Below the pieces are notes generated by a model. The model was not told the origin of the DNA, did no database searches, and saw nothing but the letters and a program-made list of their open reading frames with translations. From Setoptus koraiensis (taxonomy: Eukaryota; Animalia; Arthropoda), in the NCBI GenBank assembly GCA_048013815.1, contig CM106586.1, positions 15,562,001-15,626,000 of the forward strand: a DNA stretch of 64,000 nucleotides, given 5' to 3'. The translations under genes were made by a program, and so were the position numbers. Each line of letters begins with the position of its first letter. The stretch's first letter is position 1. Below, one piece after another: positions 2,531 through 64,000 of this stretch.

Positions 2531-2607
2531 GGGCATCAACGACAACGCGAGCAATCACAAAATCGCAAGTCTATTGTTGTCGGGCCGGCGAGTGTCATGG
2601 CTCATCA

Positions 2608-2655
2608 TTGGCCCGTCGTTGGCCCGTCGCTGGCCCGTCGCTGGCTCGTCGTTGG
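2608..2655 (+). repeat. 11-bp minisatellite, 4 copies plus a partial
   Basis: Unit (T/C)TGGC(C/T)CGTCG at 2608, 2619, 2630 and 2641. Confidence 0.9.
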
Positions 2656-2998: not shown

Positions 2999-3066
2999 AG
3001 TCCAAACTTCGGGTCAAAACTCCACAGTCCAAACTTCGGGTCCAAACTCCGGAGTCCGAGCCTCAA
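2999..3066 (+). repeat. 13/14-bp degenerate tandem repeat
   Basis: gtccaaacttcgg / gtcaaaactccaca / gtccaaacttcgg / gtccaaactccgga / gtccgagcctcaaa. Confidence 0.8.
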
Positions 3067-6000
3067 AGTCCGGGCGACGACTCACCCACCGGACACTGCT
3101 GGCGTGCACGTAGCGGCCGGCATAATGGATTGCATTTTGCGCACAAGTCAAAGCAGAGGCCCCATTCTAATCCTGTCGCCGACACTGGCGATCGACGACG
3201 CGATTGCAGGCCCGATCTCAATGGCTGATTTGATTGGGTCTCGGGACTGGCGCAGAACAGTGTTTCGGCACGCCGATAAGTCCCGTGTCTTGTATCATCG
3301 ACGGTCGCTGTCATTTATTTACTTCGTTTATTTCGTTTATTTATACGTTTTACGCGATAAGCGCGAGTCCGACGGATCGCATCGAGACGCGATGCCGATG
3401 TCGCCAATCGCCGAGAGCCGTCAATGAGTTTCTGCCTCTCGTCATCCAGAGGGAATTAGAGAAATCTTTCAGAGCTATCTCTGGGCCGTGGCAGAATTTC
3501 TCTGAGAATCCGCGAGCACTTTCGCAGCGCCAATGCACGTCAATTTGAGCCAGAGTGGCCAAAATGTTGCACGAGCACGCGGCGGGTGTAATATGGTCAA
3601 AAATCAACAAGTCAACCCAACTTTTCGAGCTGCTCGTTAAGCTGGATGCGACCAGTGATTTGCAGGCTGGCGTTTGGTCGCTGGCGATTGGCGAGCACAA
3701 CATTTGAAACTTGTAAACCATTCAGTTTGTGACAGTTGATGCGAGCCAACTTATCGCCCGCCAGCATGCGAGCCTGCGAGTCTGCGAGCCCCTCGAGCTT
3801 ATCCATAATGCGCGCCGTCTAATCTCGTCTAATCCAACTATGCCAACGGCGTCAGCAATTGTACAACTGCAAAGATTTATATTATAACAAGCCATACATT
3901 TATATATTTTTCGCCAATCTATAACGGCCTCTAATAATATAATATCTAGAACAGAATTAGCGACAGTGGCGGCGGGCGATTAGCGAGCATGAGAATGATC
4001 GCTCGCAGTTCGCAGTTTGAACGCGATTCGACAATCAGATCGGCTTCGATTTCGATTATTCTGTTTATTCGATTCGGTGCGCTTTCACACACACACCAGT
4101 GCCATGCTGCAAACTTGTGCCCCGTTCGCGATCGGCGCAATCGAACGAACGGGCGCAACAACGTCACGTAAGCTATTACGAAATGCGAGCGAATAAGCGC
4201 GTCTCGCTCTCGTCGAACGCGCCGAACGCGTCGAACGCTGCGAATCGTTCGAATGATCTATTTCTGTTTTGGCTGATCTGTCTCGTGGGCTGAGCCCGTG
4301 CAACGCGCGCTCGCATAATGCGTCTGCCAATTGCGCCCCTGCGCTGTCTCCATCTCACGTGTTCCACATCACTGGCGGGCCCCTGGCTGTCGATGGGCGC
4401 CGGCCGGTTGCCAACAATAACAACGACGACAACAGCGACAACAACCACGACAGCGACAAACAGAAAGGAGTAATGGGAACGGGGCTCTCGATGCTCCCAA
4501 TCATCGAATCCCAACCCGAGGGCTGGGTCAAGTGTGTCACGTGTGACAAAAAAGGGCTGCCCTCCATAATATCACATTTTTGCACAATAGCCACAGTGTG
4601 CCCAGTGTGAGCCTGTTATGCAACAGGCGCTGGTATCGCCATCGGTTTGGCTTCCTCTTTCATTCATTTTTTGCACAATTGTCATGTGCTGCTGGCCCCA
4701 ATGTCACCCAGTTCACCAATGTAGTTCGACGGATTCATGGGCACCGTTGATGATTTATTTTTTTCTATCCTGTCCATGCGAGGTGGAGAGCCGATTGCTT
4801 TGTTGCACTGAGGCCGCCATCCATCTGTTCTCCTTACCTGTTGCTCGACGATCGAGCCACATTAGATAACTGTTACGTTTACTCTTTTGCACCATTTTGG
4901 GGCCCGCCGTTCCGATGTCCGCGGCAACTGTTCGCCTGGAGTTAGTTTCCAGTTGAAACTGGCAACATTTGCCAGCCCATACTACCCACAGAACAGTTTG
5001 GACAGCAGCGACTCGATGCAGTTCTCACCACACAAGTGCTGCGTCGGGCCGCCCAAAAGCGAGCCAATTTGCACCAAAACGCAACTTGTCAGACCAACCA
5101 AAACCGAAGCGGCCAATTATTGCTGCCCGTCGACAAAGACGCAACTGTGGCTGTCACGCTATTGGCTCACATTTGCGTATATTTGCATAAATATCTATAT
5201 ATATATACATATTTCACCTTGGGCCATCAATTTGTTTGTGCTCGGCGGCGCTTCTTTTCGTTTCTCTGGCACTGTGGCCTTCTTTCGGGCACTGTCGCCT
5301 TGTCTCTGACACTGCTGTGCCCTCGAGGAACCGCCGGCAACACGGGAGCCCGGCATACCTGTTGAGCCCGCGCACACCGCGTCACAGTAAGCGACTCGAA
5401 ATGCATTTATACCGATACGCACGCCGGAGGGGACCGCTTTTTGGTGGACTGGTCGACGGTGGCCGAGCCAATCGATCATGCGCTGCACATGGCCGCTTGC
5501 AAGTTGCAAGTTTAAATATTTGATTACGACACGATGCGACAATGCAACGGCCTGGAGGAATAATTTGCACTGTTGTAATTTGCAAAGAAAAAAATTGTCC
5601 CAAAAAGTCTTGCGCGGCGCCGGCCCCATGCAAAATTCGTGTAAAATGCAATTTAAGCAACTGTTGCGCGCCATTAATTTCTCAATGCGTTTCCGTGGCT
5701 CTGGCATTGGTCTCGTTGCAATATTTGCCCAACACACATTACGCTCGCTCTAGATACATTACATTTATCCGCTCGTCTAATGGCCTCATCATTTTGTGCC
5801 CATCGGGCCATGTCACCGACGGCACCATGCAACCCAATGCAAGGCTGTGTTGTCGCGAATTGAGGACCCCATTTTAGAGCGAGAAACAGAGCGCTAGATC
5901 GAGACAAATTGAGTAAATAATTTTTGTGTGTTTGTCGCTTCTGCAGATCAGAGTATCGTCTGAAAGCAACGACATACAAACTGCAGTGCACCAAACAACC

Positions 6001-6380
6001 GATGGGCGGCCGACCGCCCATTTCTTCTCGTCCGAGGCCCCCGGTGTCAGGCCGATCCCAGAGAGAAGATACCCGAAGGAAATGATGGACATTATGCACC
6101 TACGGGGCTCATTATCGTGTCCGCTCTGCTCGCGTTTGCAGTTTTGCAATGTTCGCATGATCGCAAAACAGAAGCGAGCCGTTTGACGTCCTGAGTTGGA
6201 TGTTGCAAGTCCGAACGGAGGCTTGCTATGCGTACGCGAGGGCCGACAGGAGATACTTGTTGTTTATGGCAGTTGTCGTGATCGTCGTCGTGTTTGCTCG
6301 TAGTTGTTAAACTCTAGACATGAATGATTTTCCACTGTTTGTTTGCTGCGCACTTTGTTTTGTCCATTACTGGCTACCGC

Positions 6381-6381
<1 letters not shown>

Positions 6382-6467
<86 letters not shown>

Positions 6468-6486
6468 CAACGACGACGACGACGAC
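6382..6486 (+). repeat. (GAC)35 microsatellite with a few AAC interruptions
   Basis: 105 bp read directly; non-coding context. Confidence 0.97.
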
Positions 6487-7987
6487 GCGCTCACAAGTTG
6501 CCACGATGAGAAAGTATAATGTTTGCAAAACGACCAGTTGCAGATGCCTCAATGATCAACTACCTGGCCATTATGCACCAATCAATAATCAGGTTGCATC
6601 ATTGCTCTGGCGTGCTTGTGTCTCTGCCAGTCTATGCGACTATTTCTGTCTGGCGCCGTCCCTAATGGCTTTTACCTGACGCGCAACAAGCGCCAGGCAA
6701 AATGCAAAAGTATAAATCAATCGAATCTTGTATCTGTAACTTGTAGATGCAAGATAATAAGTATTGTTCGGTCGATTGTAGCAACCCTGGTTGCATCATT
6801 AGATCGGTTTATCCGGGCGACAATGACGATTATCCCGCCTAATCGCCACAATACAGGCCAACAATATGCCCGTGAATCGTAATACGGATTCTGTATCTAA
6901 CAACGGTCTGACATTGTTAGAGAGAGAGAGAGAGGGGGCCTCTGGCCGACGCGACCACCTATCTGACTCTTGCTGGCCTGATCTAAAGCTAATCTGATTA
7001 TTATTTCCACTTTGTGCAATCCACAATTTACAAGGCTCAGATTATCGCGCAAGATGATAATAGATTGCGGGCCCCATGAAATACATACCGCAATATATCG
7101 CTTTGGGGTATTTCTTGCGGGAATAATTGTGTTCCAAGAATATTCCATATCTTCTAACCTCGTGTTGCATATCATCGCCGGGCCCATCGTGACCCAGTGG
7201 GCCACTGAAAGAGCACGATGCCAGGCCGCTAATCAGTGCCGCTTTGCCAGAACAACAACAACAACAACAACAAACATGCTGCTTGCGGTGGTGTTAAAGT
7301 TTGACAGCGTTAAAGCGCCGATAAACAGTGACTTTTGCTGTCGGAATTATCATATCATAACATTGGATGTATACCGTTCGTTCAATGCAATGATTGCTTC
7401 GAACAGCACAAGAAGTTTGTCAAAGAAGCAACCATTGTAATGCGACGTAGCGATGCATACCGATTGTTATGCTCCTTTGGGCCCATTGTTTGTGTTTACT
7501 TCACCTTCACTTCACTTACCTTACTCCCCGCCTAGAAAACTTTTACGTTACCTTTTTCTTTTCTTGTGTTCTTGTCTGCCCCTCTGCCCCTCCCCCCCCG
7601 ATTTGCCCCCGTTCTTCTCTGTATCCTTGGAAGTGCATACCTGGTTTGCCAGTGTGTCCCTCTTTGGTGCTTTCCCCCTGTGGCAGCGCCACCGATTCAA
7701 ACTAGAGCATTATGGTGACATGGTTGCGATGATTGCGACAAGGAAAGAAGCGTTAAAAAAGTTCGCGACGAGAGTGTGGAAAATCGTCGCCAAAAGAAGT
7801 TTGCCAGCGACGGGCAGTTTGTGATCGACGACCTCAGTGACGATTCGCACACCGACACAACCGGTCGCATCTATTCATTCTGGCATATATCACGCCATAA
7901 CGCGCGCTATCATCGCTAGCATCCAGTGAATCGCCACACTGACCACGGCAACACACACACACGCACATACAGGTAACGAATATCAGT

Positions 7988-9448
7988 ATGGCCAACATTG
8001 ACATGGCCACAGCAAACAATAATTGCTGGACAGCAACAACAACAACAAGCCAGCTCCTCGTGGCCAACAGCCACCAAGACGAGCACGTGCTAAGAGAATT
8101 CGACGACGAATACGTCGAACAATACTGTAATACTGTAGGCCAGCGAGAATTATCCTCAAATGATGCACTCAATCAGGTGCACCAATCGGTATACGAAATG
8201 GATGATGCAACAACAACACCATCGGCGTTAGCTTATCACGATATAACAACAAACGAGAAAAATTTTCATCTTTTTCACCATCATCAGCATCATATTATAA
8301 CAACAACCGCCAACAACCATTACAACAACAATCACCACCAACACCAACAACAATTGCCAGATTCAACGTATATGGACGAAGATCAGCTTGACCAGCTACA
8401 AACAAATGATGAACAACAACATAACAACCAAAACTCGCTATTCGACAACAACAATCAATTGATTGCTAGCATATATAACCAACAACAACAGCCACAACAC
8501 TACGAGCACCAGCATCAACAATTTGGACAAACAATAATGATGACAGTGCCTTCATACTTGTCATCGGCCTTATCACCTGTATCCTCTCAATCCCCGCCAC
8601 TAAATTCGTCATCATTTATTTCAGAATCAACAAGTGCCACAAGTAGCAATATTGCCTTTTCAACAACACCACCAACAACAACAAGCAAACCTAAACAACA
8701 AGCAGCGGACCAATTAAAAGCAGGCACAGCAAAGAGGTCAGCGGCAGCCAAAGCATCAACGGGTAAAAAGAGGACTAATTCGCGTGGTGTCAAGACCATC
8801 ACAAAAAACAAAGACAATAACTCCAAGAAAGATATCTACAATGCCAGAATGTTGCTGAGCTCTTTAGAGCAAGCGCTGCAGCAAAGAAAGAGATCCTCAT
8901 CAACAAGCTCCTCCATTTTTTCTAGCAGCTATAACGGACCTAGCGACGACATCACGGACGATTCAACCGAGTCAACAACGACTTTTAACAACAACAATAA
9001 TCAACTCAATAATAATACTAGTAATGACGAAAACAAGGATGTTGTCGGTTACAATAATCAAAATATAAAAACATCAACTATCACAAACAATAACTCAATT
9101 GGGAACAATACCGATGATGGAGCAATATGTATAGTTGACAAGATTGTTATTAAAAAAATTAGAAGAGTTAAGGCAAATAACAGGGAACGTAATAGGATGC
9201 ACAATTTAAATGGGGCACTAGACAGACTAAGACAACATTTGCCTCCATTCGATGAAGACGCCAAATTAACGAAAATTGAAACATTGAGAGTGGCCAAAGA
9301 TTACATACTGAAACTCACTAGCTTGCTAGAGCAAACCCAAACTCAGACTAACATCAATTGCGAAACGGAACATTCCGCGATGGTGGACGACAAAACAACA
9401 CCAACAGATCAGTGCCAAGATATCAAGCCAATATTCTTAAGCACTTGA
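7988..9448 (+). CDS. tap: Neurogenin/tap-family bHLH transcription factor, intronless, 486 aa
   Basis: C-terminal b[46 protein letters not shown] matches the neurogenin signature ([13 protein letters not shown]...[14 protein letters not shown]). Long N/Q/H/T-rich N-terminus. Confidence 0.88.
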
Positions 9449-23181: not shown

Positions 23182-24312
23182 TCATCTACCAAATCCTGAC
23201 AAGTTTGTAGGTGCAAATGGATCATTGCTAGGCAGGTTCATAGAGAATGCACTGGCGGGGTTGAAAGGATCATTTTCGGGCAAAGCAAAAGCGCTAGAAT
23301 CCGAGGTGAATGGATCGTTGCCCTTGAATGGGTCATCCCCTTTGAAAGGGTCATCATTTGCAAATGGATCGTTCCCGAAAGCATCCGAATCCTCAAAGAA
23401 TGGTAAATTGGAATTTTGTGCTGATGAAGAATTATTACTCTGCGATTGGCCATCACTTTTTCTACTGCTACTACTCTTGGAACGTAAGTCGTGTAATGGT
23501 GTAGGTGGTGCTAATACTTGACTGATCAACGCACTTAACCTGATAGTATCTTTGTTATTGATTGCTTGATTTAGATCATTAATCCTGTCATCTGTTTGGG
23601 CTTTGAATTCCTCCATTTCAAGCAATTTTGTTTTGACTTCTGTTAGTTGCGATTGTGTATCAGCGAGATCTTTTGACGTAGAATCGAATTCCTCATTGCA
23701 TCTCTTTAATTCTTCTTGTAAGGTGGTCTCCTCTAATTTTAGTGTCTGCAGTCGATCTCGTTTAGTTTTCAATTCTTGATCTTTAGTCTCCACTTTAGTT
23801 CTTTCCGTATTCAATTGTTTCCTTAGTTCCTCTATTTGAGTATTCATCTCGGATAACTTAGTTACAGCGATATCTCGCTGATTATCTAATTGTTTAACCA
23901 TCTGATTATAGGCTTCAATCTCATTATGCATGGTTTTCATTTCGCTCTCTTTGAGTCGCATGCTTGCTCGCTTTTGAGCTAATTCTGCTTCCAATTGTGT
24001 TTTAGCGGCTATTATGTCCTCTGGAGTTTGACGACTGGTCATAGGTGAGGTTGTGTCTGTGGTTGTTGTTGTTACTGGATTTGTTGAGGAGGTATTGGAA
24101 ATGTTTGATCCTGCCGTGTTGTTTGTTGTGCTATTATTACTTGTATTTATTCTAGCTGAAGCCAAATGCTGAAACGGGTCATCATCTGCATTATTGGTTA
24201 TATCTCCCTTTGCGTGGGACTGTTGAACAACGTTATTTGCGTCCATTATTGTCGAAGCACTCGCATTCGTTTGGCCAGAGATATTATTACTAAAATTATC
24301 AAAGTTATCCAT
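23182..24312 (-). CDS. Eps15: Eps15-like protein: coiled coil plus DPF repeats, no EH domains or UIMs, intronless, 376 aa
   Basis: Coiled coil ELAQKRASMRLKESE..VKQLDNQRDIAVTKL resembles insect Eps15; six C-terminal DPF motifs. First ATG at 24312. Confidence 0.72.
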   Translation of the reverse strand: MDNFDNFSNNISGQTNASASTIMDANNVVQQSHAKGDITNNADDDPFQHLASARINTSNNSTTNNTAGSNISNTSSTNPVTTTTTDTTSPMTSRQTPEDIIAAKTQLEAELAQKRASMRLKESEMKTMHNEIEAYNQMVKQLDNQRDIAVTKLSEMNTQIEELRKQLNTERTKVETKDQELKTKRDRLQTLKLEETTLQEELKRCNEEFDSTSKDLADTQSQLTEVKTKLLEMEEFKAQTDDRINDLNQAINNKDTIRLSALISQVLAPPTPLHDLRSKSSSSRKSDGQSQSNNSSSAQNSNLPFFEDSDAFGNDPFANDDPFKGDDPFKGNDPFTSDSSAFALPENDPFNPASAFSMNLPSNDPFAPTNLSGFGR

Positions 24313-24475
24313 GATGATAAAATGGTACACCAGTAATGATTGAATGGGGTTTGGTTTTGTAAAGCCAATGGTTACATTAGGCTAATAACGACAACCGAAT
24401 TAAATAATTCACTATACATTGAATATAAATAGACTAGAAAACAAAATTATCATGGATGTCGTTTGTCAATCTATT

Positions 24476-33666: not shown

Positions 33667-36600
33667 ATGTTCAACATCCAGCGTTTATGTATCAGTATAC
33701 CTGCTCTCTATGTAATATTCCTGGATAGTCTACTCGTGGCGCAACTGGAATCTAGATCCGTCACAAGTTCTATTCCAAATGCTCTCACTTCCGCCTCAGC
33801 CTCAGCACCCACATCTCTGTCATCGTCTTCCAATGGTTTGGATTCTAGAGCAAACGGATTAAATTCTCGCTATTTAAATCCGGCCGGATCCTCAGTGGTG
33901 ACGCCGGGCGTTACATCATCACAAAATAATAATGGCCTCCAGCAACAGCAAGTGTCGATCGCGAGCAATCTTCAGCAAAGTAGCAACTCTAATCAGCAGC
34001 TGCAACAACAAAACAACAACTTAGAGTTGAATTTGCAAAGATTGCCGATGAATGCAACTCCAATGTTGAGCACTACATATAGTTATAATGGAAACATTGG
34101 CCAATATGTACCAGGCGACATATCGGCAAGCGGTGTTTTATTTAAACCAAATAGCAACAATAATCTAAATCTGAATATGCCCTACGGACAGTATAACCAG
34201 ATTAGGCCATTGTCAACAATTGCCTCATTAGTTTCTACGCCAAATAGCAACCAATTCACCTACGTCGGCCAGAATGGTGGCCTAAGCAATCAGTGGCCGA
34301 ATAATAATAATCTCTTTACTGGCAGTTCTAACGGCAACTACAACAATTTCATGCGCAATAATCAAAGAAACAATCAGAACGGCAATTTGTTTACTCGTCC
34401 GAATCCATATCACCATTCAATGATGAACCAATTGAGTCACATGAACAACTTGATGAGGCAACCAATAAATTCTGTGAACAATCACATAATTACAGATGCC
34501 GTAACTGGCGCCGATGACTACTATCAACAATTGGATCAGAATCAGTACTCCATTAGTTCAAATAATCAACAGCAGAGTTCATTCAATAACTTGGATGGAA
34601 ATTATGCAAACAATGTGGCACAAATAGATCCATTTATTGGTTCGTCAGCATCAAATTTGGTTCCGACAATACAAATGCCAACCCCAGGATTTGGTGGCTA
34701 CTTAGACAATTACAAGGGCAACGATCAGTGTATATCGGCAGACAATAGACACGGAACCTGCTACCCAGCCAGCGAATGTATGAAACGAGGTGGAACTCCA
34801 ATGGGCAAGTGTGGAGGTCCTAGCGATCTTGCAAGCTCAGGCTCCGTTTGTTGTTCATGTAAGTTAACAAAGTTACGTATATTACCTGAAGCAAACTAGT
34901 AGAGAGTCGAGTTTTCTATCTAATTTGCCGATTTCATTTGTCATTTGCCTTCTACTCACTTTGCCATTCAGTTGAGCTCTCCTGTGGTCAATTTGCCGCA
35001 GAACGTTTTGTCTACTTCCGTAACCCAAACTATCCAATGAGTTTTGATCAATCGCGAATGTGTCGTGCCCGGATAGGAAAGTTAGACAAAGGAATATGCC
35101 AATTGAGGCTGGACTTCATACGCTTCGATTTGGCGCGGCCCACTAATGGAAACTGTTCAACTGATATGTTTGTGATAACTGGACAAAACGAGAACAGCGT
35201 AATACCAAAGATCTGTGGTCTAAACGATGGACAACATTGTAAGTTGCTTTATGTATCGTTACTTTCCTTTCATTTACTTTTTCAATCAAAAAACAAACTT
35301 ATCAAAATACCAAATCCATTATTGTCTTCTCAAAATGAAATCCAGATTACGTGGGCGTTGACGAGTCGAGCATGATCACTTTACATATGTTGATGTTGGG
35401 CGCTCATAGGCGCCAATTTGAGATACTTATCACCCAGATACCGTGTAGGTCGGATTATGCAGGTATGTTTTCCTAATGGCACATTCTTTTAGATTTCTAG
35501 AAAGTCTTCATACGTGATGTTCAATGACACCACGAGAGGGTGTGTTGATATATAAAATAACTTGAATGGACACTTCTCATTTGGGCAACAACAATATTAA
35601 TATATATTTTGCTTTATGCCTCTGTCTAAAACTGTAGCACCGTCACACTGTTTGCAGTACTACATGGGTACAAATGGCGCGATAAAAAGTTTCAACTACG
35701 ATGACGATTTCAATATTTACCAACAACAACACCTTGTTTCTGGCCAGCAAGACGGTACTCCAATAATAGTGGACAACTATTCGTTGGCGTCAATCAATAG
35801 CGGCCAATTTGCACCTTACTCCACAAATCAGTTGGCGAATTCGCTAGTTAACGCAGGACAGCAACAGCGCAATCCGTTTGGATCGCTACAGAATCCCGGA
35901 TGGACACAGGCCACAAATAGGTTCGGGGCCACTGGCTACGACATATCACACCAGCAACAGCAAACTGATTGGCCAGTTACAGGCGGCGGATATCCGAATG
36001 ATCTGGATTATAGTATGTGCATCAGAAAAGAATCGGGTTTTTGTTCCATAACTTATCTGCTGTCACGATCTGATATGGGTCTAACCCAGCCTTTCGCCAT
36101 AGGCCACCAACCGTTGACTGGCTCAACTCTCGACAATTTTGCCAATTTCGCCAACAACGATACCCAACAACATCAGACAGTACCCTCAGATGACAATTTG
36201 GTTTCAACCGAATGCCGTGACGATTATCTACTAATTGGAGGTGTGCGTTTATGTAGCGGTAACGCCGCTTCAACCGGAAGTGGCAATAGTTTGCGCGGAC
36301 AGCAACAACAACAGCTACATTTGCAACAGCAAGCCTCTTTTGTTAATGGCACATCATCGTCGTTGCCATTGTCTTCGGTTGGTACCCAACAACAATCCTT
36401 GGGTGCAGTATGGTTGGCAAATCTGCGAGAGCAACAGGCAATTCTGCAACAACAATTGATCAGGTTGCAACAGCAGAAACACTACAGTTCAACAAATCAA
36501 GGAAATCACACAAACATATCGATAGTTTCGGCTAACAATAACAACAGTCTACCACAAACTATTAATAGCACTGATTTAGATCAGCAACAGCAACAACTGC

Positions 36601-36803
36601 AAGCTCAATTGCAAAGTTTGATGATATTGCAACAGCAGCTAGTAAGCCAACAACAGCAACAACATTATAGCGACCAGCAGAGTGGTGGTGTTATTATCAC
36701 CGACGATACATCGGGTCCATTTATATTGCGTTTCGTTTCTAATATGGCAAGAAATGCGCGCGGATTCCATTTAGAGTATAGACAAAATCCCTGTAACAAG
36801 TGA
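33667..36803 (+). CDS. Secreted CUB-domain protein; join(33667..34858,34972..35238,35346..35462,35638..36803)
   Basis: Signal-like N-terminus; GTCY..SEC..RGG..MGKC..SVCC; YFRNPNYP; ICQLRLDFIRFDL; PKICGLNDGQHYYV; ITQIPC; CLQYYMG.NG.IKSFNY; DYSMCIRKESGFCSI; GFHLEYRQNPC. The start could also be 33628. Confidence 0.88.
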
Positions 36804-37878
36804 AACAGACAATTTGTATATGATTCCCTTCAGATAATTGGTCTAAATCAGCATCAATTAAGATAAATCAATTGATAGTTTAATATTTGATTTGGCGAAA
36901 GATTTGACGAGTTCCTGCACTCGCTAACCATTCCATCCACTATTCACAATGACCGTCGCGATCAGAAGAAACAGGTTGTCAGAGTATAACCTATTCTTGT
37001 TGATGTCAAGTGATAAGATTTGGTACGTACAAACATTGTATTGTAGCTACTCATCAAAGACATTATTGTAACACAAACACAGAATTATTTTGACAAATTA
37101 TTTAATATTTAATTACTAAAACTTATCGGCCTCTCTTGTGGATGCTTAGATGACATCTATATTTATCAATCGTGCATATTGTGGAGTATCTTCTGACTGC
37201 TTCTACTCGAAACCTCATTACACAAGGGGATTAGAGTTATCAGAGATATCAGAAAGAAAACAACATCACATGAGGAAGTCGATACTCCGAAGAGTCGAGT
37301 TATATCGGATATCAGATAGTTCTTTTATTTTGTGCATTCATTTCGAGCAATATCTTAAAAACAGCGCCTCGGTTTAGATAGCGATCTTAGAAAGGGATAT
37401 AAACAATTTCCTAAAGTTTTCTCTTGTTTTGTTTGTACGCTATTGGTGATTTTGCTTACTAGAAAATGGAAACATTATGGGTCTGATGTAATAACAGCTT
37501 TGGTTCACCTAGCATAAATCGTTTGTGCCTTTATCAATTGGACTTCATGTATCACCGGGGAATTTGATCATTGTTGCATGGTAAATTTGAAAATCAGTTT
37601 CTCGATGGGTAGTTTCACCAAAACTACTAATCTCATCTTGAGTGTGGTTTTATAAAGATTCTTTCCATTTTTTCTGTAGTCCCCTCAGCTAGATTACCCA
37701 AAGAGGCATCTATCTCTCAATAGTGCTCTTATTTGGTCCTGTATTTATGTTATATTTTCTGACAAAATTTTGCAACGGTTAAAAAATCTTGAGTTGGGGT
37801 CATGGTCAGTTCTATTGTTGTCAAAATTTCTTAGAGGAAAACTTTAATCAAACGATCAATTGACGCGCTCAAGTAGTT

Positions 37879-39330
37879 CTATAATTTAGTTGACTCGAGT
37901 TCCTCCACGTTCAATGCGCAATCCAGCCTAGCATCCATTGATTTATTAAGATGCTTTTTGTCTCGGAATTCATTTAACTCTGATGACAATCTGCGATTAT
38001 TTACTCCTGCCATATCTAGCGCTCTTAATAGTGTTTTTTCCAAGTGTTTATTCCTGTATTTACCACCGACATAATTCAACAGTTTATCTAATATAACTTT
38101 GACTAGGACAACCTGGCCATCTCGTGAGATCACTAAAATACCCTGTCCATTTATTTCCGCGACAGCACAACATATTATGTTTAATGTAATTGTCACTTGA
38201 AAAAGTATATCGCTGTTAGTGGTATCACAAACAAACATCTGACCATATTTTGTCGTGATATATGCTAAATTCAACTCTTTCTGTCGAGCGCATACTATTG
38301 AAGTGGGGACATCACAGTCAGACCATCTACTATTGATCTTTATAGATTGTGCGGGATCCCGATGACACATAGTATTGACTACAGTTGGCATGTCAATAAA
38401 ATAAACTTTTATAGATTCTCCTATCTTATTGGCAGCAATAAGGGTTGTATAATTGGCATTGGTTGGAACTAGTGTTTTGTTTTTAGTCTTTGGCTTGTTC
38501 AACGGTGTTGAGAATGCAACCGCATGTGCTTCGATTGTTTGGGAACGTTTGCGTAGGCAACAGTAAATCTGTACAAGCCCGCAAATGTTTTCTTCTATTG
38601 ATCCCTCTTTCGAGTCTGACTGGTAATTATCCAGAGAGTCGTTTGTCATGAAAGAAAATCGATTGCTAGTGAGTGTGGAATTGGTGTTGGATTTCTTTCG
38701 ATACTCCAGGTAAGTTGTCAGTCCGCTTAGAGCAAATATGTTGCAACTAGCGTCTCGCTGTATGCTAGTAATCTGACATAATGAGGTTAGTTTGGGGTCG
38801 CAATCGAATTCCTTGTTCAAATTGAGAGACTTTGATCTATTGGTTATAGCAGAGTGGGCGAAGTGATTGATCTGAGGCTGTGTTATGCAACAAGTATACA
38901 CATGTTTCTGAGAGATGATTCCTAAGGTCACTTGATCAATCCATTGCCAATGGATAACGTCTCCCATGGTTAATCCATTCGCTGAAAGATTGACTTCTCT
39001 AACAATGTTCGCATATTCGCATTTGGTATTATCTACAAGATCAATTATGATAATTTTATTATCATTTGACAAAGCTATATATTGCATGTTCTCATTGACC
39101 TGAGCACAATCGCAATTGTCAAGTATATCGGTGCTGAGTAAAAATTCGTAAGACTCTTGATCGGTTATTAACTTGATGGTAGAATTGCTACAGCAACAAA
39201 TACAACGTGAAGAGGTAGACTTGACCTTAGCCCAACTAATATCATCGCGCGTGAGACCAACATCGGTGAGTTTTACAAGTTCCGTTATCTCGACAAGGTT
39301 GTCCCCATTGTCATCGATTGATTGGTCCAT
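37879..39330 (-). CDS. Stand-alone, divergent clathrin heavy chain terminal domain (beta-propeller plus linker start), intronless, 483 aa
   Basis: Colinear with CLTC residues about 1-365: DVIHWQWI~DVTFWKWI, GLVQIYC~GAMQLYS, SQTIEAHAVAF~SQPIEGHAASF, DVPTSI~DFPVAM, TTKYGQMFVCD~ITKYGYIHLYD, SRDGQVVLV~NRKGQVLSV. Stop after about 40 further residues. Confidence 0.82.
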   Translation of the reverse strand: MDQSIDDNGDNLVEITELVKLTDVGLTRDDISWAKVKSTSSRCICCCSNSTIKLITDQESYEFLLSTDILDNCDCAQVNENMQYIALSNDNKIIIIDLVDNTKCEYANIVREVNLSANGLTMGDVIHWQWIDQVTLGIISQKHVYTCCITQPQINHFAHSAITNRSKSLNLNKEFDCDPKLTSLCQITSIQRDASCNIFALSGLTTYLEYRKKSNTNSTLTSNRFSFMTNDSLDNYQSDSKEGSIEENICGLVQIYCCLRKRSQTIEAHAVAFSTPLNKPKTKNKTLVPTNANYTTLIAANKIGESIKVYFIDMPTVVNTMCHRDPAQSIKINSRWSDCDVPTSIVCARQKELNLAYITTKYGQMFVCDTTNSDILFQVTITLNIICCAVAEINGQGILVISRDGQVVLVKVILDKLLNYVGGKYRNKHLEKTLLRALDMAGVNNRRLSSELNEFRDKKHLNKSMDARLDCALNVEELESTKL

Positions 39331-40909
39331 TTTGAGATGCAAGATTTCAAAGATTTCTCAGTAATTATAGTGATTTCAGATGACCACAACGGAATATTCC
39401 GTTTCGGAGCAATAAATGTTTGTTTATGATCATGCCTGCATCGTGATGAAGGCTTACTCAATTCTCATATAGTCCTGTTTAGATACATTGAATGAGATTA
39501 ACAGGAGACGAGACTTCTTGGGCGTGACCTCAAAATAAAAAACATTCATTTATTCTGATGATTTGAAAAAATAATTAAGTTCGATACGGTTGATGAAAGG
39601 CCATTTAGCTCGGTTTGCGTGTATTGCGTTGTATATTGTTCAGCGTGTGTTGAAACAATTTGACAAATGTATTGTTTTTCACTTTTAGAAAATCTATTCT
39701 TCTTTATTTTATCGCCATATTAAAATAATGATGGTTGTAATACGCCCCCGTGGCAATGAAAGGACTGCTGCGATACATTGCACAATCGTTTGTTGGAACG
39801 ACGGCAATAATTCATTGATTGTGACCAAGTGATGACATCTTTTTTGAATTATATTACAAATGTTGCTGGTGCAAAAAATATCCTCTCAAGTTATTATTTA
39901 CTGTAGAGTATTGAGTTTCAGAGAATTGATTGACAGAGGGAGGTTTTGTTCTCGAACAGAATCTCTTCAAACTTGTTGAATGTGTTCTTCAAACTGGCGT
40001 CAGAAGGAAATAGTTGTAAATAATACGCTAGCCGGCATTTGTTTATTTAAAATAGGGATGGGTGATGTTTTAACAAGTTGTACATTATGTAAACAGGATA
40101 AATGATTTTTAAAGTCAACAAACTGATGCAGTTTTTAGCTGGTTGTGCGGTTAGCCGCGGCCCGGCCCGACACGACATCGATCGAAGCGACTGCGTGAAT
40201 CTCGGCGATTGAATGATCGAAGTCTTGCAAATAATCATTAAATTTTGCCATAAGGGGTCTCGCATCGATCTAAATCAATTCACAGTTACGTTGTTGCGAA
40301 TACTACCTATATTAAACAATATAGATATGCAAATTGGACGAGGGGCGGGACGGCTCAATATTTTCGCTGAGGTAGGGTTACCCGTGGTCATAAGCATCGT
40401 TGGTCGCTACTTTAATTTTCTTGTTAGTCTTGTTTTTCAGCATAACCGCTGCATGAGTTTCTCACATACACACAAGAATGATGGTGCGAAATCAAATCGT
40501 GTAAAGTTTGAAATCGGCGCTATTCTTGTGAATAGGGCAATTAAATTGTTCGCATTTCAGCGAGTCTACCGTACAAAAGCTGACGACATGAACAGTTGAC
40601 AGGAGGCTAAGCGGGGGAAAGCACTCAGCACACACAGATTCATTTGCAGCGAACAGACACACCTACAAAACTGGAGTTGAGCCAACAGAGGGGAGGCCAG
40701 TAGGTAAAGCTAATAAATAATAAATGATGATAATAACAATAATAACAATTATGACTCCGTCCCAGGCAACAGGAGTTTTCTTCCAGAGATTTGCCGAAAT
40801 GCTCAACATTTTGTTTTAATTTCAATAATTATTTCATTTTGAATCAACAAGCAAGCGGAAAAATATTTTTGTTTATCATTCACCTATTAATATTCACTCA
40901 CAGAAAAAA

Positions 40910-42814
<1,905 letters not shown>

Positions 42815-47949: not shown

Positions 47950-50900
47950 ATGGCAGTAGAGCTCGAGTCGAGAAGGAGGCCCTTCCTATCTGGCCTGACA
48001 ATCTGGTCGATTGGTGTTGTCATTATTAGCTGCCTAATAGTGACCCTGGTGAAACAGGCCAATAATGGCAAATCGTTTATTGTTGGCGATGCCACATCAT
48101 CTCATCAAAGTCAGCAACAAATCGCTGACACCAAACAAACATTTGCGTCCGAAATCAAAAATTGGGCAGGCAGATTAGGCTCTGACATTTATGAGGGCTC
48201 ATCTAAGGCGACCTGTGTGCGTTCAATTCGCGACGCCTATCTGGAACGAGGCGCCCAAGTAGAGCAAATTGACGCTTTCAGGATGCATTCAGACATGTTG
48301 CAACAAATCAGCGATATGATGGTCTGGCACAGGAAGGCTGTTGAATTGATTGCACGAAATGCCGAAGCTCTAGCTGCCAATCACACCTTTATAAAGAATC
48401 TTCATTATGATTATTTAGATGTGCATCGTTTGCGTGGCCTAGACGAGCCCCATTTTCCGACGGACTTCTCTCAATTAGCCGATGATCTATCAAATCAAGC
48501 TGCCTCGTCATCATCCGGAGCGATCAACGTCACCGAGGTACAACAACAGATAATGTTACAGCAACAGTTGGCCAACAATCCGTTAGTGAACGACCCGTCG
48601 TCCTCGGCGGGTTTCAATCAACAAACACCAAGCCAATATCCGGCCTCTAGCAATGGTGGATCACCGGTGCCGGGGCCAGCCGAATGGCAGACACCATTCA
48701 GATATATAGCGCTGTCGAAGCACAAGAATTTCCCTGACATTTTGGTCAATTTGGACATGTCTGCCGTCCATTTACCGGTGCCCGTTTATCCCGGCCAGCA
48801 GGAGATTATGAATGGCATTATGTGGACAGAGGGACTAAATAAGGTTTTTAAGGACAACATGGTTAGAAATCCGCGTCTCACAAATCAATATTTTGCCTCG
48901 TATTTGGGCTTCTTGCGAACATATCCCGCACACAAATGGCGAATTGCACGTAGCGAGCCTGACTTGTACGATGCACGAATGAGGCCGTGGTACGTTGCTG
49001 GTGCCGCATCTCCCAAAGATCTAGTGATTTTAGTTGATTCTAGTGGCTCGATGACGGGCTTGAGACGCGAAATAGCCAAAGGTGTTGTATTTGAAATACT
49101 GGACACGCTCACCGACAATGATTATTTTTCCATATTGAAATTCTCTGAGACTGTCACTCCGATTGGATTGCCTCGATGCGATGCTCCGAAGCCGCCCAAA
49201 TTGGGCACCAATATTGCCAATCTGTGTTTGCCAAACAATCCCACCCCGTTGGATAATAAACAAAAGGTGATTTGTAACAATTACAAAGAACAGCAACAAC
49301 GTCAGACTTTGTACAGACAAGCCCAGATTAAATTGAAGAAGGCCAAACAGCAGCAACTGTTGCAACAACAACTCCTTATGAAAAACAAGAACACACCAAA
49401 TGCCGGTCAGCAATTTGACGCCTCCGATTTGACCACTGACCAGCAAACAATGATGGCCATTGACGACAACATAACCGTCTCGCTTTTAGACGATCTCAAT
49501 GTGATCAATTACAACAATCAACAATATGCATTTAGTCCTACCATTGTCAATGTCACAAACGATCTTGAGGGAGCGCTCATTTTGCCTGCCACGGGCAGAA
49601 ATATTCGCCACATCAAGGGTAATTTCAGTATGACCACATCGGGAATAGCAAATTTCACACACGCTCTAACGGCCGCCTTTGAATTGTTGCAATCATATAA
49701 TAGGACGGGCGATCAGGGTTCTCAATGCAACCAGGCCATTATGCTCATTACTGATGGCGCCCCTGAGGAGAATTTCCAGGAAATTTTCAATCGTTACAAC
49801 TACCCGGATAAGTCGATCAGATTATTTAGTTATGTGATTGGTCGCGAGGTGGGCGACATCAATCCAACCCGTTTGATGGCTTGCAACAATCGAGGATACT
49901 ACACGCACGTGATAAATCTGTCCGAAGTCCGCGAACAAGTGCAACAATATCTGCCTGTGATGTCTAGACCCTTGGTGTTGTGGAAGCAGCATCCGGTTGT
50001 TTGGACGGCCGCATACGGAGACGAAACTTATCAGTTGTTGTCCGATTGGGTGTGGGAAAGCAAGAGACGCGAAAGGGCCAAGATTATCCTGAGCGAAGAA
50101 AGAGATCGCTTGAGTATGGAGGCGTCCAACGAAACTTATACAGTTATTATAATATTGACAGGCATAAAGGAGTATGATGAAATACCACAAGTTGACGAGG
50201 AGCTCAAGAGGCGCTATGTTTGCGAAGACAAAATAGACGATTTGCCGTCGGACGACGAATTTGACACATTGGGCTACAATGACATGGATTGTCATTGGCA
50301 AACTAAGCGTGCCGATCTATTGACCAGTGTTGTTCAGCCAGTGTTTAATACAAAAAACGAAACTCTCTTCTTTGAGCGAGTCCTCCAAAAGAACATTTGG
50401 ATCGAAAAGGAAAAAATGGTGTTCAATGCACAATTGCTGGGCATGGCCTCAGTGGATATTAGCATCGCTGATCTGATGGCCATGGCACCATCGCACAAGC
50501 TAGGCCCCAATGCTTATCCCATATTGGTCACCAACAACGGCTACATTATGTCTCATCCAAATTTGCGCGCCCTATTAGAGGACCCCACCGATCGTCAGTC
50601 GCGTATATTGAAACCGTTTTTTGCTTCGGTTGATCTTAGTCACGTCGAGCTAACTGTTAGCGAGGGTGCCGACAGGAGGCGACCTTATGAGTTTAGTAGG
50701 CGCATTTTGGCGCTTAGAGACGCAGTGGTGAAACGAATGATTGGCTACGATACATTCATGACAAAGCGACCAATTGATTGCCAAAAGAGGGCCCAAACTC
50801 GCAACCAAACCTTCTATTACGGACCAATCAAAGATACGCCATTCAGTTTTTTGATTTCGTTACCACAACCGTACGGATTGTATCGTGTCAAGGCCCAATT

Positions 50901-61973: not shown

Positions 61974-62840
61974 GCGACAACAGTGAAAGTAACGCCAGCG
62001 ATGACACTCGGTGACACAACACAAACAGCGGCACGCAAGCATCTTTCGTCATCGGTTTAGTTTCAGCATCATTTCTTGTAACATTGTTGTGTAACAATGT
62101 CTGCTCGCCCGTCGCATCACAATCGGCGCCTGTCAGTGGTGGCCGTAGACCCCACGGCATAGAGTTGCGATTGTGGAGAAGAGTCGCCGCGGGGTGGGCG
62201 CGCAGATGAAGAGATGTCACCAAGAAAAGGTGTTATGTAACAATATTGTGAGTTATGCAACAATGTCGCATGTTGCCCAATGTCCGACAAGTTGGAGAGA
62301 ACAGACGAGAGTCGACAGTCGGCGCGATCTCGCAGAGCCAACATGCCGCTGTCCGAACATGACTGTTTGACAGCGGCTCACTAATGCTGTCATCGTTACG
62401 AGCAGATAGTGTTACATAATGCGACATTGTGTCGCCGTGATGTGTGTAACGACCATTGTTGGCCGCTCAACAGAGACACAAGCGACAAGTGTATCAATGA
62501 ACTCTGTCCCATTGTGCGCCATCGGTCTGCATCACACTGTCGGCTATTCTGGGCTATTCTGCACTGGCCGCAAGACGCAGCCCAACGGCGGGCCCATTGT
62601 GGTCACTTTCTCCATTTTTGCCATTTGTAAACAAACAATTTGTAGACAAACAATTTGTGATAGACAATTTGTGATAGACGAACAAATTGTGGACTAACAA
62701 ATTGGCAGCACATTTAGCATACATGGCGTGCCAATTTACAGTTGCCTTGCTCATCTGGGCTGCGCTAACTGTAAATTGTCGCAAATTGTGTAACTACTAG
62801 TGGCCATACTGCACGACACCACAGACACCCTAGCGCTTGA

Positions 62841-62887
62841 CCGCTATAAATAGCGGCCCGGGGCAACCATGGCCGGCTCATTTGCAT
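62841..62887 (+). promoter_or_regulatory. Candidate core promoter: TATA box, Inr-like TCATTT, octamer ATTTGCAT
   Basis: TATAAA at 62845; TCATTT at 62878; ATTTGCAT at 62880..62887; ATG of the next gene at 63182. Confidence 0.55.
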
Positions 62888-63181
62888 CGTCCGAGTCGCA
62901 TAGGTCGCTCATGAAAGCGCACAAGTCAAGCCAGCAAGCAGATACAGCCAACCAGCAAGCCAGCCAACGTCCAGACCGAATATTCAGATAATCCGATCAG
63001 ATAAACCAGATATAACACAACACATTTTGCACATTTGCACAACAACACACACGTAATACAGCACCAAGAGCATCGTGGAGTACAGCAGTGATACACGGTG
63101 CTTCACTGGGTACCACTGAGTTATATCACAGTTAGCTAGCAATATAACAGAGCCACGTATCATATCATATATCACACCAAA

Positions 63182-64000
63182 ATGGCCAAACTGAGCGTAC
63201 CTGTCACATTGGTGCTATCGTCGGGCGCCTGTCTGGCCGTCTGTTGTCTCATACTGATCGCAAATACCCACTCAATTCAAGCGAGCACCTCTGACTCGCC
63301 CCTGGCTGCCGTCGTTTCCGTGCCCATGGATGAGGCCGAGACGGTGGCCGTCACACAACAATTGTTTGCCAATAACGGATCGTCACAGCAACACGAAAAA
63401 GAGGCAGAAAAGAAGCCCCAAACAACGACAACAACCAACTCAACCGAACAGCACTCAAACCAATCACAACCACCGACACAACAGAGAAACACAATTAGAC
63501 ACAGACAACGCGGCAGCAGACAATATTCGCCCAGCTCGCTAGACTCATACGCAAACGCATATCAGGCCGTTTCCGGTGCCGGCTCAGCAGCCAGCCAGTA
63601 CTCAGGCGACGCTGATTATGCGCCTATAACCAGCTCCAAATTATCGTCGTCGGCCAACTATCACCCGTCCTATTATGACAGGCCGTCTCTGTCCGCTCTC
63701 GACAGTGTTGGCCCGTCATCTGGTGCAACCCAACAGCAACTGTCATCCAGTGGCAGAGCCTCTGATTACATAACCCAACAGCAGCAGCAGCAATACAGCA
63801 ACGCTGGTCACTTCAATGGAGATCAATTGAGTCAAACAGATTATTCTGACGGGCCCAGCTCGTCTGCAATGTATTCAGCGGGGCACAGTGGCGCCTCTAG
63901 CGGACCAGTTCATGGCAACAGCAACAGCCCGGCATCTGGTAGTGTGTCGTCCCACCAGGCGGCCCACTCATTGAACAGTCCAAGCCACCAAGCGATGTAT
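63182..64000 (+). CDS. Secreted low-complexity (S/Q/A/Y-rich) protein, 5' part, open to the window end
   Basis: 273 codons without a stop from ATG 63182; signal peptide MAKLSVPVTLVLSSGACLAVCCLILIA; RQRGSR furin-like site. Missing from the ORF track because it has no stop inside the window. Confidence 0.82.
   Translation, partial: MAKLSVPVTLVLSSGACLAVCCLILIANTHSIQASTSDSPLAAVVSVPMDEAETVAVTQQLFANNGSSQQHEKEAEKKPQTTTTTNSTEQHSNQSQPPTQQRNTIRHRQRGSRQYSPSSLDSYANAYQAVSGAGSAASQYSGDADYAPITSSKLSSSANYHPSYYDRPSLSALDSVGPSSGATQQQLSSSGRASDYITQQQQQQYSNAGHFNGDQLSQTDYSDGPSSSAMYSAGHSGASSGPVHGNSNSPASGSVSSHQAAHSLNSPSHQAMY

What the first reader, a model, noticed from the sequence alone, without database searches (positions are those of the whole stretch)
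37879..39330. Free-standing clathrin terminal domain gene
The 483-aa intronless ORF follows the clathrin heavy chain beta-propeller motif by motif into the start of the linker, then stops. Only about 1 kb separates it from the convergent CUB gene, so the roughly 1300-aa leg and trimerisation domain cannot follow. It is strongly diverged yet frame-intact, has loop insertions, and has about 22 Cys by my count. By-eye alignment suggests the clathrin-box groove is altered (TLQIFNIEMKSKMK becomes KIIIIDLVDNTKCE). It cannot form triskelia, so it may be an adaptor decoy/regulator or a repurposed propeller; isolated terminal domain is known to bind adaptors. I know of no described animal gene with this architecture.
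Basis: partly seen in the sequence, partly recalled or inferred. Interest (0 to 1): 0.85.

Follow-up and report, generated by a model that had tools for sequence, protein, structure and literature searches.

The report
Stand-alone clathrin terminal-domain gene
This mite gene encodes only the adaptor-binding "foot" of clathrin; it is intact and under strong selection, and it belongs to an old, apparently unstudied animal gene family that also occurs in lampreys, lungfish, reptiles, ticks and molluscs.

Summary
Window 37879-39330 (minus strand) is an intact, intronless 483-codon gene. Its product is a clathrin terminal domain (TD) plus the first linker helices, then a short disordered tail.

- **Fold:** the model matches solved clathrin TDs at Z 39.9 (rmsd 2.4-2.5 Å over about 345 residues). 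Other WD40 propellers reach only Z about 20.
- **Selection:** it is not a pseudogene. dN/dS against a 92%-identical syntenic ortholog is 0.06-0.09.
- **Not a mite invention:** 14 further eriophyoid-type mite sequences form one clade. That clade nests inside an acariform mite clade of a wider family of short TD-only proteins. Members occur in scorpions, ticks, spiders, horseshoe crabs, centipedes, priapulids, molluscs, brachiopods, annelids, a hemichordate, lamprey, lungfish, caecilians, turtles and lizards.
- **Distinct from real heavy chains:** the family separates from canonical heavy chains with 100/100 support. Databases label members "clathrin heavy chain-like". I found no paper describing them.
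- **Binding sites:** in the mite protein the clathrin-box groove is remodelled, while arrestin-box residues (R260, Q264, I266) are kept.
- **C-terminus:** every acariform mite member ends in T-[K/R]-L, and deuterostome members end in T-x-V. This is a class-I PDZ-ligand pattern.

Function is inferred: a non-polymerising peptide-binding propeller held on a PDZ scaffold. Expression is not shown.

The parts
37879..39330 (-). Complete intronless coding sequence (483 codons plus TAG stop) of the stand-alone clathrin terminal-domain protein
   Evidence: ORF list and sequence. The ortholog P0001 has the same start and stop. dN/dS is 0.06-0.09.
38092..39303 (-). Seven-bladed beta-propeller (residues 10-413), homologous to clathrin heavy chain residues 4 to about 330
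   Evidence: AF2 model mcbc40201f930, pLDDT 82.6. VIA-align Z 39.9, rmsd 2.4-2.5 Å to solved clathrin TDs. PDB profile search E 1e-17.
37948..38091 (-). Three helices (residues 414-461) matching the first linker helices of clathrin (to about residue 375)
   Evidence: Secondary structure of the model. Superposition on 1bpo, 5ods and 9r9b reaches chain residues 375-376.
37882..37947 (-). Low-confidence, probably disordered tail (residues 462-483)
   Evidence: pLDDT 42-48 in the last blocks.
37882..37893 (-). C-terminal S-T-K-L. T-[K/R]-L-COOH is invariant in all mite members and fits the class-I PDZ-ligand pattern.
   Evidence: C-termini compiled. Alignments.
39190..39204 (-). C-I-C-C-C strand of blade 1 (residues 43-47). 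It replaces the I-C-I-R-E/H strand of clathrin and of other TD-only proteins. C43, C45 and C47 are invariant in a five-sequence alignment of the mite clade.
   Evidence: Alignments.
39004..39039 (-). Lengthened c-d hairpin of blade 2 (residues 98-109) at the clathrin-box groove. It grows to about 60 low-complexity residues in sister species.
   Evidence: Model strands 93-97 and 110-113. Alignment block. Site table.
38587..38712 (-). Roughly 40-residue insertion in the blade-4 hairpin (residues 207-248), low confidence. Sister species carry a conserved serine-rich motif here that this species has lost.
   Evidence: pLDDT 49-66. Alignments.
38818..38886 (-). Insertion between blades 3 and 4 (residues 149-171)
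38449..38508 (-). Insertion in blade 5 (residues 275-294)
38524..38553 (-). R260-H269 segment. This is the best-kept stretch relative to clathrin 188-197 and holds the arrestin-box residues R188, Q192 and I194.
   Evidence: Site table. Invariant columns.
36804..37878 (.). 1,075-bp spacer to the convergent CUB-domain gene. It holds no further coding capacity for a clathrin leg.
   Evidence: The ortholog locus L001 has the same layout.
39331..41209 (.). 1.9-kb upstream spacer shared head-to-head with a PAK-type kinase gene (41210-42814, plus strand)
   Evidence: Synteny in L001.

Best explanation
Shown: the gene encodes a folded clathrin terminal domain plus the first linker helices and nothing more. 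It is under strong purifying selection. It is the eriophyoid-type mite ortholog of an old bilaterian family of TD-only proteins that is separate from the true heavy chains.

Inferred: the protein has no leg or trimerisation domain, so it does not polymerise and probably acts as a single unit. It most likely works as clathrin's TD does, as a platform that binds short linear peptide motifs in grooves between propeller blades, but with changed specificity. The clathrin-box groove between blades 1 and 2 has lost its key polar and basic residues and carries an enlarged hairpin. The residues of the blade 4/5 (arrestin-box) site and part of the central W-box pocket are kept.

The invariant free C-terminus T-[K/R]-L (T-x-V in deuterostome members) most likely docks onto a PDZ-domain scaffold. 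This would place the propeller at a particular membrane or cortical site, where it recruits or sequesters motif-bearing partners independently of clathrin lattices.

The confidence given is for the whole statement. The 'shown' part alone I put at about 0.95, and the inferred mechanism at about 0.5.
For: - Fold and homology: (Z 39.9 against about 20 for other propellers).
- Architecture ends after the linker start: with a conserved stop in all family members.
- Selection: dN/dS 0.06-0.09, with differences at codon positions 1/2/3 of 26/19/133. Protein identity to the congener is 91.7%, the highest among six neighbouring genes compared at 81-91%.
- Family: 16 representatives at E<1e-30, then a gap to clathrins. 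Named members span many phyla.
- Tree: canonical versus TD-only split 100/100. The vertebrate branch follows the species tree. Acariform clade 100/99, eriophyoid-type clade 100/100.
- Site mapping: Q89 to I, R64 to D, K96/K98 lost. R188, Q192 and I194 are kept as R260, Q264 and I266 and are invariant in the 15 mite-clade sequences. Q152 is kept and F27 becomes W.
- C-terminus: 26 of 26 full-length acariform mite sequences listed, plus the scorpion, end T-[KR]-L. Hemichordate, lamprey, caecilians and lungfish end T-[TAS]-V.
Against: - No binding, localisation or oligomeric-state data exist.
- Expression is not demonstrated. The only RNA-labelled run gave one 187-nt contig, which could be DNA carry-over.
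- The retained 'arrestin-box' residues sit in the most conserved structural motif of the fold, so they may be kept for stability rather than binding.
- W164, part of that site and invariant everywhere else, is replaced in the mite clade.
- The PDZ-type ending is missing from many family members: ticks, spider, molluscs, squamates and turtles. It is therefore either not ancestral or often lost, and some of those ends may be gene-model errors.
- The hairpin register at the clathrin-box site is alignment-dependent (versus 46, 66).
Confidence: 0.5

Rival explanations
1. Adaptor decoy or competitive regulator. The free TD binds the same clathrin-box, W-box and arrestin-box motifs as clathrin. It thereby titrates AP-2, epsin, amphiphysin and similar proteins away from triskelia and tunes coat assembly.
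For: The fold is a near-complete copy of the adaptor-binding domain. In non-mite family members the groove keeps Q/E at 89, Y/F at 91 and K/R at 96. It is established knowledge that isolated TD binds adaptors.
Against: In the window protein and its clade Q89, R64, K96 and K98 are all replaced, and a variable low-complexity hairpin sits at the groove. Family-wide, R64 becomes W and K98 becomes L, which removes the basic contacts for the acidic end of the clathrin box. A pure decoy would not need a conserved C-terminal anchoring motif.
Confidence: 0.17
2. The C-terminal T-[K/R]-L is not a PDZ ligand but another terminal signal. It could be a weak peroxisomal PTS1-like tripeptide, or a phospho-threonine 14-3-3 mode III site. 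Either would send or regulate the propeller in a different way.
For: [KR]-L-COOH matches two of the three PTS1 positions. T-x-x-COOH fits the mode III spacing. Both comparisons rest on my own knowledge. The motif itself is invariant in mites.
Against: Threonine at position -3 is outside the canonical PTS1 set [SAC]. The deuterostome endings TSV, TAV and TTV fit PDZ class I but not PTS1. No upstream arginine typical of 14-3-3 sites is conserved.
Confidence: 0.08
3. Accessory subunit of a coat or tether. The propeller docks onto another scaffold, such as canonical clathrin legs or a different alpha-solenoid partner, and supplies an extra or alternative 'foot'.
For: The first linker helices, which connect TD to the leg in clathrin, are retained and conserved. 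The long persistence of the gene beside a full-length heavy chain suggests a non-redundant role.
Against: No partner gene is linked to it. Synteny is kept only between the two closest species. Nothing in the sequence points to a specific docking surface.
Confidence: 0.1
4. Decaying copy: a retro-copied or truncated fragment of the heavy-chain gene with no function.
For: It is intronless, highly diverged from clathrin (about 20% identity), and gives no Pfam hit.
Against: dN/dS is 0.06-0.09. There are intact orthologs at 33-40% identity in at least 14 further species with the same start, stop and terminal motif. The gene nests in a clade that tracks animal phylogeny. The whole genome region is intron-poor.
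Confidence: 0.02
5. It belongs to a different WD40 or beta-propeller family, and the clathrin likeness is superficial.
For: There is no Pfam match. Language-model neighbours include Vps16, HPS5 and Vps8 propellers.
Against: Apart from one chance-level hit (E 0.73) to an unrelated protein in the profile search, all sequence hits in PDB are clathrin. There is a gap of 11 orders of magnitude in Foldseek E-value and about 20 Z-units to the next fold. Swiss-Prot structural hits are the 14 clathrin heavy chains.
Confidence: 0.01

Closest known systems
Terminal domain of clathrin heavy chain (CLTC/CHC17 residues 1-363; PDB 1bpo, 1c9i, 1utc, 3gd1)
   Same: Homologous seven-bladed propeller plus first linker helices: Z 39.9, rmsd 2.4-2.5 Å, about 20% identity. 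It shares the W-x-W strand, the S-Q-x-I-E-x-H segment, and the D-F-P, T-K-x-G and N-G-Q-V motifs.
   Different: It is a separate gene that stops at about clathrin residue 376. It has no leg repeats, light-chain site or trimerisation domain. The clathrin-box residues R64, Q89, K96 and K98 are replaced. There are four loop insertions, a cysteine-run strand and a conserved T-K-L C-terminus.
Unnamed family of short 'clathrin heavy chain 1/2-like' or 'uncharacterized' predicted proteins. Examples: Lingula XP_013398554.1, Limulus XP_013786453.1, Dinothrombium RWS08938.1, Oppia XP_054155573.1, Dermatophagoides LOC113789354, Glandiceps XP_077996151.1, Microcaecilia XP_030065525.1, Anolis 'clathrin heavy chain 2 isoform X2'.
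   Same: Same TD-only architecture. One clade against canonical heavy chains (100/100). Shared tryptophan at the F27 position. T-x-[LV] C-terminus in many members.
   Different: The window's clade sits on a long stem (1.12 substitutions per site) and is 480-650 aa instead of 340-460 because of low-complexity loop insertions. It has lost W164 and the family's W at position 64, and has C-I-C-C-C in place of I-C-I-R-H.
CHC22 (CLTCL1), the vertebrate second heavy chain
   Same: A clathrin paralog with altered adaptor specificity.
   Different: CHC22 is a full-length, trimerising heavy chain that arose in jawed vertebrates (PMC6548504). The TD-only family is much older, much shorter, and present in lamprey and invertebrates.
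CLHC1 (clathrin heavy chain linker domain-containing protein 1)
   Same: A short clathrin-related protein of unknown function. This comparison rests on my own knowledge.
   Different: It is named for the linker motif, not the propeller. It did not appear among the structural neighbours of the model in Swiss-Prot, where only the 14 heavy chains matched.

Membership tests
Clathrin heavy chain (canonical CHC17/CHC22 type) | N-terminal seven-bladed terminal domain | tested here: met
   Z 39.9 to solved TDs. Profile E 1e-17.
Clathrin heavy chain (canonical CHC17/CHC22 type) | About 1,300-residue alpha-solenoid leg (CHCR repeats) after the linker | tested here: not met
   The ORF stops at residue 483, about clathrin 376 plus a 20-residue tail. 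1,075 bp of non-coding DNA separate it from the next, convergent gene.
Clathrin heavy chain (canonical CHC17/CHC22 type) | C-terminal trimerisation domain and light-chain binding region | tested here: not met
   Absent from the ORF and from all orthologs.
Clathrin heavy chain (canonical CHC17/CHC22 type) | Clathrin-box groove residues (R64, Q89, F91, K96, K98) | tested here: not met
   The window protein has D68, I94, I96 and C104/Y106, or A107/I109 in the other register.
TD-only clathrin-like family (unnamed; database label 'clathrin heavy chain-like') | Groups with TD-only proteins to the exclusion of canonical heavy-chain TDs | tested here: met
   Split supported 100/100. The window is nested in the acariform clade at 100/99 (quick tree agrees).
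TD-only clathrin-like family (unnamed; database label 'clathrin heavy chain-like') | Protein ends after the first linker helices plus a short variable tail | tested here: met
TD-only clathrin-like family (unnamed; database label 'clathrin heavy chain-like') | Family-specific residues: W at clathrin position 27, W at position 64 | tested here: inconclusive
   W33 is present. Position 64 is D in the window and I/V in its clade, against W in non-mite members.
Class-I PDZ ligand | Free C-terminus [S/T]-x-hydrophobic | tested here: met
   The protein ends S-T-K-L. The pattern is invariant in 26 acariform mite sequences and recurs in deuterostome members.
Class-I PDZ ligand | Physical binding to a PDZ domain | not testable with these tools
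   This needs peptide-PDZ binding assays.
Canonical WD40 repeat proteins | WD40 repeat signature, or closest structural neighbours being WD40 proteins | tested here: not met
   No Pfam WD40 hit. WD40 structures score about half the Z of clathrin TD.

The most novel reading that the evidence does not exclude
Bilaterian animals carry a third, unrecognised clathrin-related gene lineage: a stand-alone terminal domain that never polymerises and is tethered by a PDZ-type C-terminus. It acts as an independent hub or regulator for endocytic or trafficking motifs. It has gone unnoticed because, in the capped searches run here, no member came from mammals, birds, frogs, teleosts, insects or Caenorhabditis. 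The mite copy is an extreme, insertion-rich version with a remodelled clathrin-box groove.
Probability: 0.45. Interest if true: 0.75.

Novelty: new variant of a known kind. Interest (0 to 1): 0.62.

Why it matters
Clathrin biology is built on two full-length heavy chains. The terminal domain is known only as the adaptor-binding end of a triskelion, or as a laboratory fragment.

A naturally free-standing terminal domain under strong selection, inherited vertically from before the protostome-deuterostome split, implies that the domain has a job that does not need a coat. It offers natural variants in which individual peptide grooves have been kept or rebuilt, which bears on the long debate about redundancy among the four TD binding sites.

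It also corrects gene counts. A phylogenetic study of heavy-chain genes reports one CHC gene in lamprey (PMC6548504), yet lamprey also has a TD-only gene.

For genome annotation, these proteins should not be named 'clathrin heavy chain'.

Tried and rejected
- **Pfam scan of the window protein:** no significant hit. The 37-residue Clathrin_propel model is too short and the protein too diverged. Some non-mite relatives hit it weakly.
- **Expression:** one run search and one read-laying run were available. Three runs hold all the sampled words (X2-X4); the two laid (X2, X4) span the whole stretch in single contigs and look like the genome's own DNA source. The laid low-depth run (X5) covers intergenic DNA too, so it is DNA. 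The single 'RNA?' run has one 187-nt contig in the ORF. This is not evidence of transcription.
- **Synteny beyond the closest species:** CUB and PAK neighbours are kept only in L001, not in the short contigs L002-L004.
- **CLHC1 as a possible relative:** not among structural neighbours, and its papers are uninformative. I could not fetch its sequence to compare directly.
- **Hits of 470-750 aa in the representative search:** checked as possible related short forms. They are mostly fragments or fusions of canonical heavy chains.
- **The PTS1 reading of T-K-L:** considered and ranked low because deuterostome endings do not fit.
- **Literature:** six searches and one targeted reading found no description of a TD-only clathrin paralog. 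The library holds open-access papers only, so absence is not proof.
- **Organism and canonical heavy chain:** I could not confirm the organism's name or verify the canonical heavy-chain gene of this genome myself. Both rest on an earlier scan note.
Full report
**1. What is in the sequence**

On the minus strand an open frame runs from the ATG at 39330 to a TAG at 37879-37881 and encodes 483 residues. An in-frame TTG four codons upstream is not used by the ortholog, which starts at the same ATG.

Downstream lie 1,075 bp without any ORF of 80 aa or more. Then comes the end of a convergent CUB-domain gene (35616-36803). Upstream, 1.9 kb separate the gene from a divergent PAK-type kinase gene starting at 41210. 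There is no room for a clathrin leg.

**2. Is it really a clathrin terminal domain?**

Pfam finds nothing, but every other test agrees.

- A single-sequence search of all PDB chains returns only clathrin heavy chains, with a best E of 4.5e-10.
- A profile of five family members raises this to 1e-17.
- A first AlphaFold model from five sequences (pLDDT 58.6) hit 39 clathrin TD structures at E about 1e-20 before any other propeller at 1e-9.
- A second model from a 53-sequence alignment is confident (pLDDT 82.6, pTM 0.84).
- That model superposes on solved clathrin TDs with Z 39.9 and rmsd 2.4-2.5 Å over 343-349 of about 355 residues. The best unrelated WD40 propellers reach Z about 20.
- In Swiss-Prot models the only strong matches are the 14 clathrin heavy chains.

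Model residues 10-441 match clathrin 4-358. With TD-plus-linker structures the match runs to clathrin 375-376 at model residue 464. The last 20 residues are of low confidence.

**3. Is it a live gene?**

A contig from another sample (L001) carries a 92%-identical 483-residue ortholog in the same gene order: haem lyase, PIGA, Mob1, PAK kinase, this gene, CUB gene. Between the two, differences at codon positions 1, 2 and 3 number 26, 19 and 133. dN/dS is 0.06-0.09 by four methods, with dS 0.46-0.64. Its 91.7% protein identity is the highest among the six neighbouring genes compared, which range from 81% to 91%. This is strong purifying selection, so the pseudogene reading is excluded.

Direct evidence of transcription is missing. 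The runs that hold the region are DNA-like. The one run labelled RNA gave a single 187-nt contig inside the ORF, which proves nothing.

**4. The family**

An exhaustive profile search of 1.84 billion representative proteins found 16 members at E<1e-30. They are 272-648 aa (two of them truncated fragments); none of the ten looked up carries an informative name, and those traced come from assembled reads and metagenomes. After a large gap, weaker hits begin at E 3e-25.

Every complete member ends in [S/T/A]-T-[K/R]-L. All five sequences in the first family alignment carry a C-I-C-x-C strand in blade 1. Most carry long low-complexity loops.

The weaker hits were the surprise. Many are not fragments of heavy chains but complete short proteins from annotated genomes, labelled 'clathrin heavy chain 1/2-like' or 'uncharacterized'.

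| Group | Organisms |
|---|---|
| Mites | Dinothrombium, Oppia, Dermatophagoides, Blomia |
| Other arachnids and horseshoe crabs | Scorpions (Centruroides), horseshoe crabs (Limulus, Tachypleus), spider (Nephila), ticks (Ixodes, Haemaphysalis, Dermacentor, Rhipicephalus) |
| Other ecdysozoans | Centipede (Strigamia), Priapulus |
| Lophotrochozoans | Gastropods and a bivalve, brachiopod (Lingula), annelids (Owenia, Ridgeia) |
| Deuterostomes | Hemichordate (Glandiceps), lamprey, lungfish, caecilians, many turtles and squamates including Anolis |

No mammal, bird, frog, teleost or insect appeared. The searches were capped, so this is not proof of absence.

**5. Phylogeny**

A maximum-likelihood tree used 57 sequences and 375 columns, with a site-heterogeneous model and 1000 ultrafast bootstraps plus SH-aLRT.

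- It separates the 12 canonical heavy-chain TDs from all 45 TD-only proteins with 100/100 support.
- Inside the TD-only side the vertebrates branch as lamprey, lungfish, caecilian, turtle, lizards. This is the species order, as expected for a vertically inherited gene.
- Acariform mites form a clade (100/99).
- The window's clade of 15 sequences is monophyletic (100/100) on a long stem of 1.12 substitutions per site.
- A quicker tree gave the same picture.

The window gene is therefore a fast-evolving ortholog of an old bilaterian gene, not a recent truncation of the mite's heavy-chain gene. An earlier scan note reports a full-length heavy-chain gene elsewhere in this genome and calls the organism an eriophyoid-type mite. 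I did not verify either point. The intron-poor, compact window and the tree position are consistent with the mite label.

**6. Binding sites**

I used a canonical sequence (P0036) that is co-linear with human CLTC over residues 1-197. The published site residues come from my own knowledge: site 1 is R64, Q89, F91, K96, K98; site 2 is F27, Q152, I154, I170; site 3 is R188, Q192 and neighbours; site 4 is E11. Searches give this picture.

| Site | Clathrin residue | Window protein |
|---|---|---|
| 1, clathrin box | Q89 | I94 (A/V/I in the clade) |
| 1 | R64 | D68 |
| 1 | F91 | I96 |
| 1 | K96, K98 | No basic counterpart |
| 1 | c-d hairpin, 4 residues | 10 residues here, up to about 60 low-complexity residues in sister species |
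| 2, W-box | F27 | W33 |
| 2 | Q152 | Q186 (kept) |
| 2 | I154 | T188 |
| 2 | I170 | L204 |
| 3, arrestin box | R188, Q192, I194 | R260, Q264, I266, each invariant in all 15 clade members |
| 3 | W164 | I198 (W is invariant in every other group) |
| 4 | E11 | E17 (kept; glutamine in most of the clade) |

Across the wider family, Q/E89, Y/F91 and K/R96 persist outside mites. R64 is tryptophan and K98 is leucine, so even the ancestral groove was less basic than clathrin's.

HMMER's local alignments place the hairpin one strand later than MAFFT does (versus 66). The conclusion that the polar and basic contacts are gone holds in both registers.

**7. The C-terminus**

All 26 full-length acariform mite sequences listed, and the scorpion, end T-[K/R]-L. 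The hemichordate ends T-T-V, lamprey T-A-V, and caecilians and lungfish T-S-V. Lingula ends I-R-L. Ticks, spider, horseshoe crabs, molluscs, annelids, turtles and squamates end differently.

A threonine at -2 and a leucine or valine at the free end is the class-I PDZ-ligand pattern. [S/T]-[K/R]-L resembles ligands of NHERF-type PDZ domains. Both statements rest on my own knowledge. Its strict retention through several hundred million years of mite evolution, in an otherwise variable and disordered tail, shows that the free end is functional. Its recurrence on both sides of the bilaterian tree suggests, but does not prove, that it is ancestral. A PTS1 or 14-3-3 reading fits the mite endings less well and the deuterostome endings not at all.

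**8. Most likely mechanism**

Shown: this is a selected, folded, non-polymerisable clathrin TD.

Inferred: it serves as a peptide-motif-binding module whose specificity has moved away from the clathrin box. It is positioned through its C-terminus by a PDZ scaffold, and it acts independently of coats. I put this at about 0.5.

Other readings are minor.

**9. Novelty**

The architecture is common in genome annotations, so the mite gene is not unique. Six literature searches and a targeted reading of the main heavy-chain phylogeny paper found no description of the family. That paper counts a single CHC gene in lamprey (PMC6548504).

I therefore rate the finding as a new variant of a known kind. 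The domain is known, but its existence as an ancient stand-alone gene appears unrecognised.

Noticed in passing
window 1-8000 and 62001-64000: G+C is 0.49-0.54 at both ends of the window against 0.37-0.43 across most of the rest (one 2-kb bin at 48001-50000 reaches 0.46). This is a sharp compositional step of unknown cause.
   Followed up: no
window 40711-40749: A short AT-rich simple repeat in the spacer upstream of the gene. Several other contigs of the same genome runs join here, so it is a dispersed repeat.
   Followed up: partly
window 40213-40599 (+): A 128-aa ORF in the spacer between this gene and the kinase gene. It has no support and is probably spurious.
   Followed up: no
P0005-P0008, P0010, P0011, P0014, P0017 (sister-species proteins); equivalent to window 38587-38712: Most sister species carry a conserved serine-rich motif (L-R-P-S-F-G-S-[VM]-P-S-R-L-S-Q-[LM]) in the disordered blade-4 insertion, next to the arrestin-box site. 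The window's species and its congener have lost it. It may be a phospho-regulatory element.
   Followed up: partly
P0120 (748 aa, representative search hit): A protein that joins a clathrin propeller and linker motif to a complete protein kinase domain (Pfam Pkinase 482-733). Organism unknown.
   Followed up: no
P0025 (Owenia fusiformis, 1087 aa) and P0089 (572 aa): Other TD-first architectures. The Owenia family member carries a 650-residue serine/lysine-rich tail. P0089 has a canonical-type TD followed by an unrelated coiled-coil-like tail.
   Followed up: no
AlphaFold DB hit A0A0V0WEY3 (439 aa, named 'Clathrin heavy chain 2'): A short TD-length entry that matches the model over residues 7-360. 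From its accession series I would guess Trichinella, but the organism is not shown and I did not check whether it is a family member or a fragment.
   Followed up: no
window 23182-24330: Another first-stage note on this window reports an 'Eps15 without EH domains or UIMs' 15 kb away. That is a second atypical endocytic gene in the same window. I did not examine it.
   Followed up: no
P0176/P0178 (Dermatophagoides pteronyssinus LOC113789354, 683-686 aa) and P0171 (Blomia, 684 aa): NCBI models of the house-dust-mite orthologs are about 180 residues longer than the 487-508-aa forms found in assemblies. This suggests N-terminal extensions or alternative gene models.
   Followed up: no
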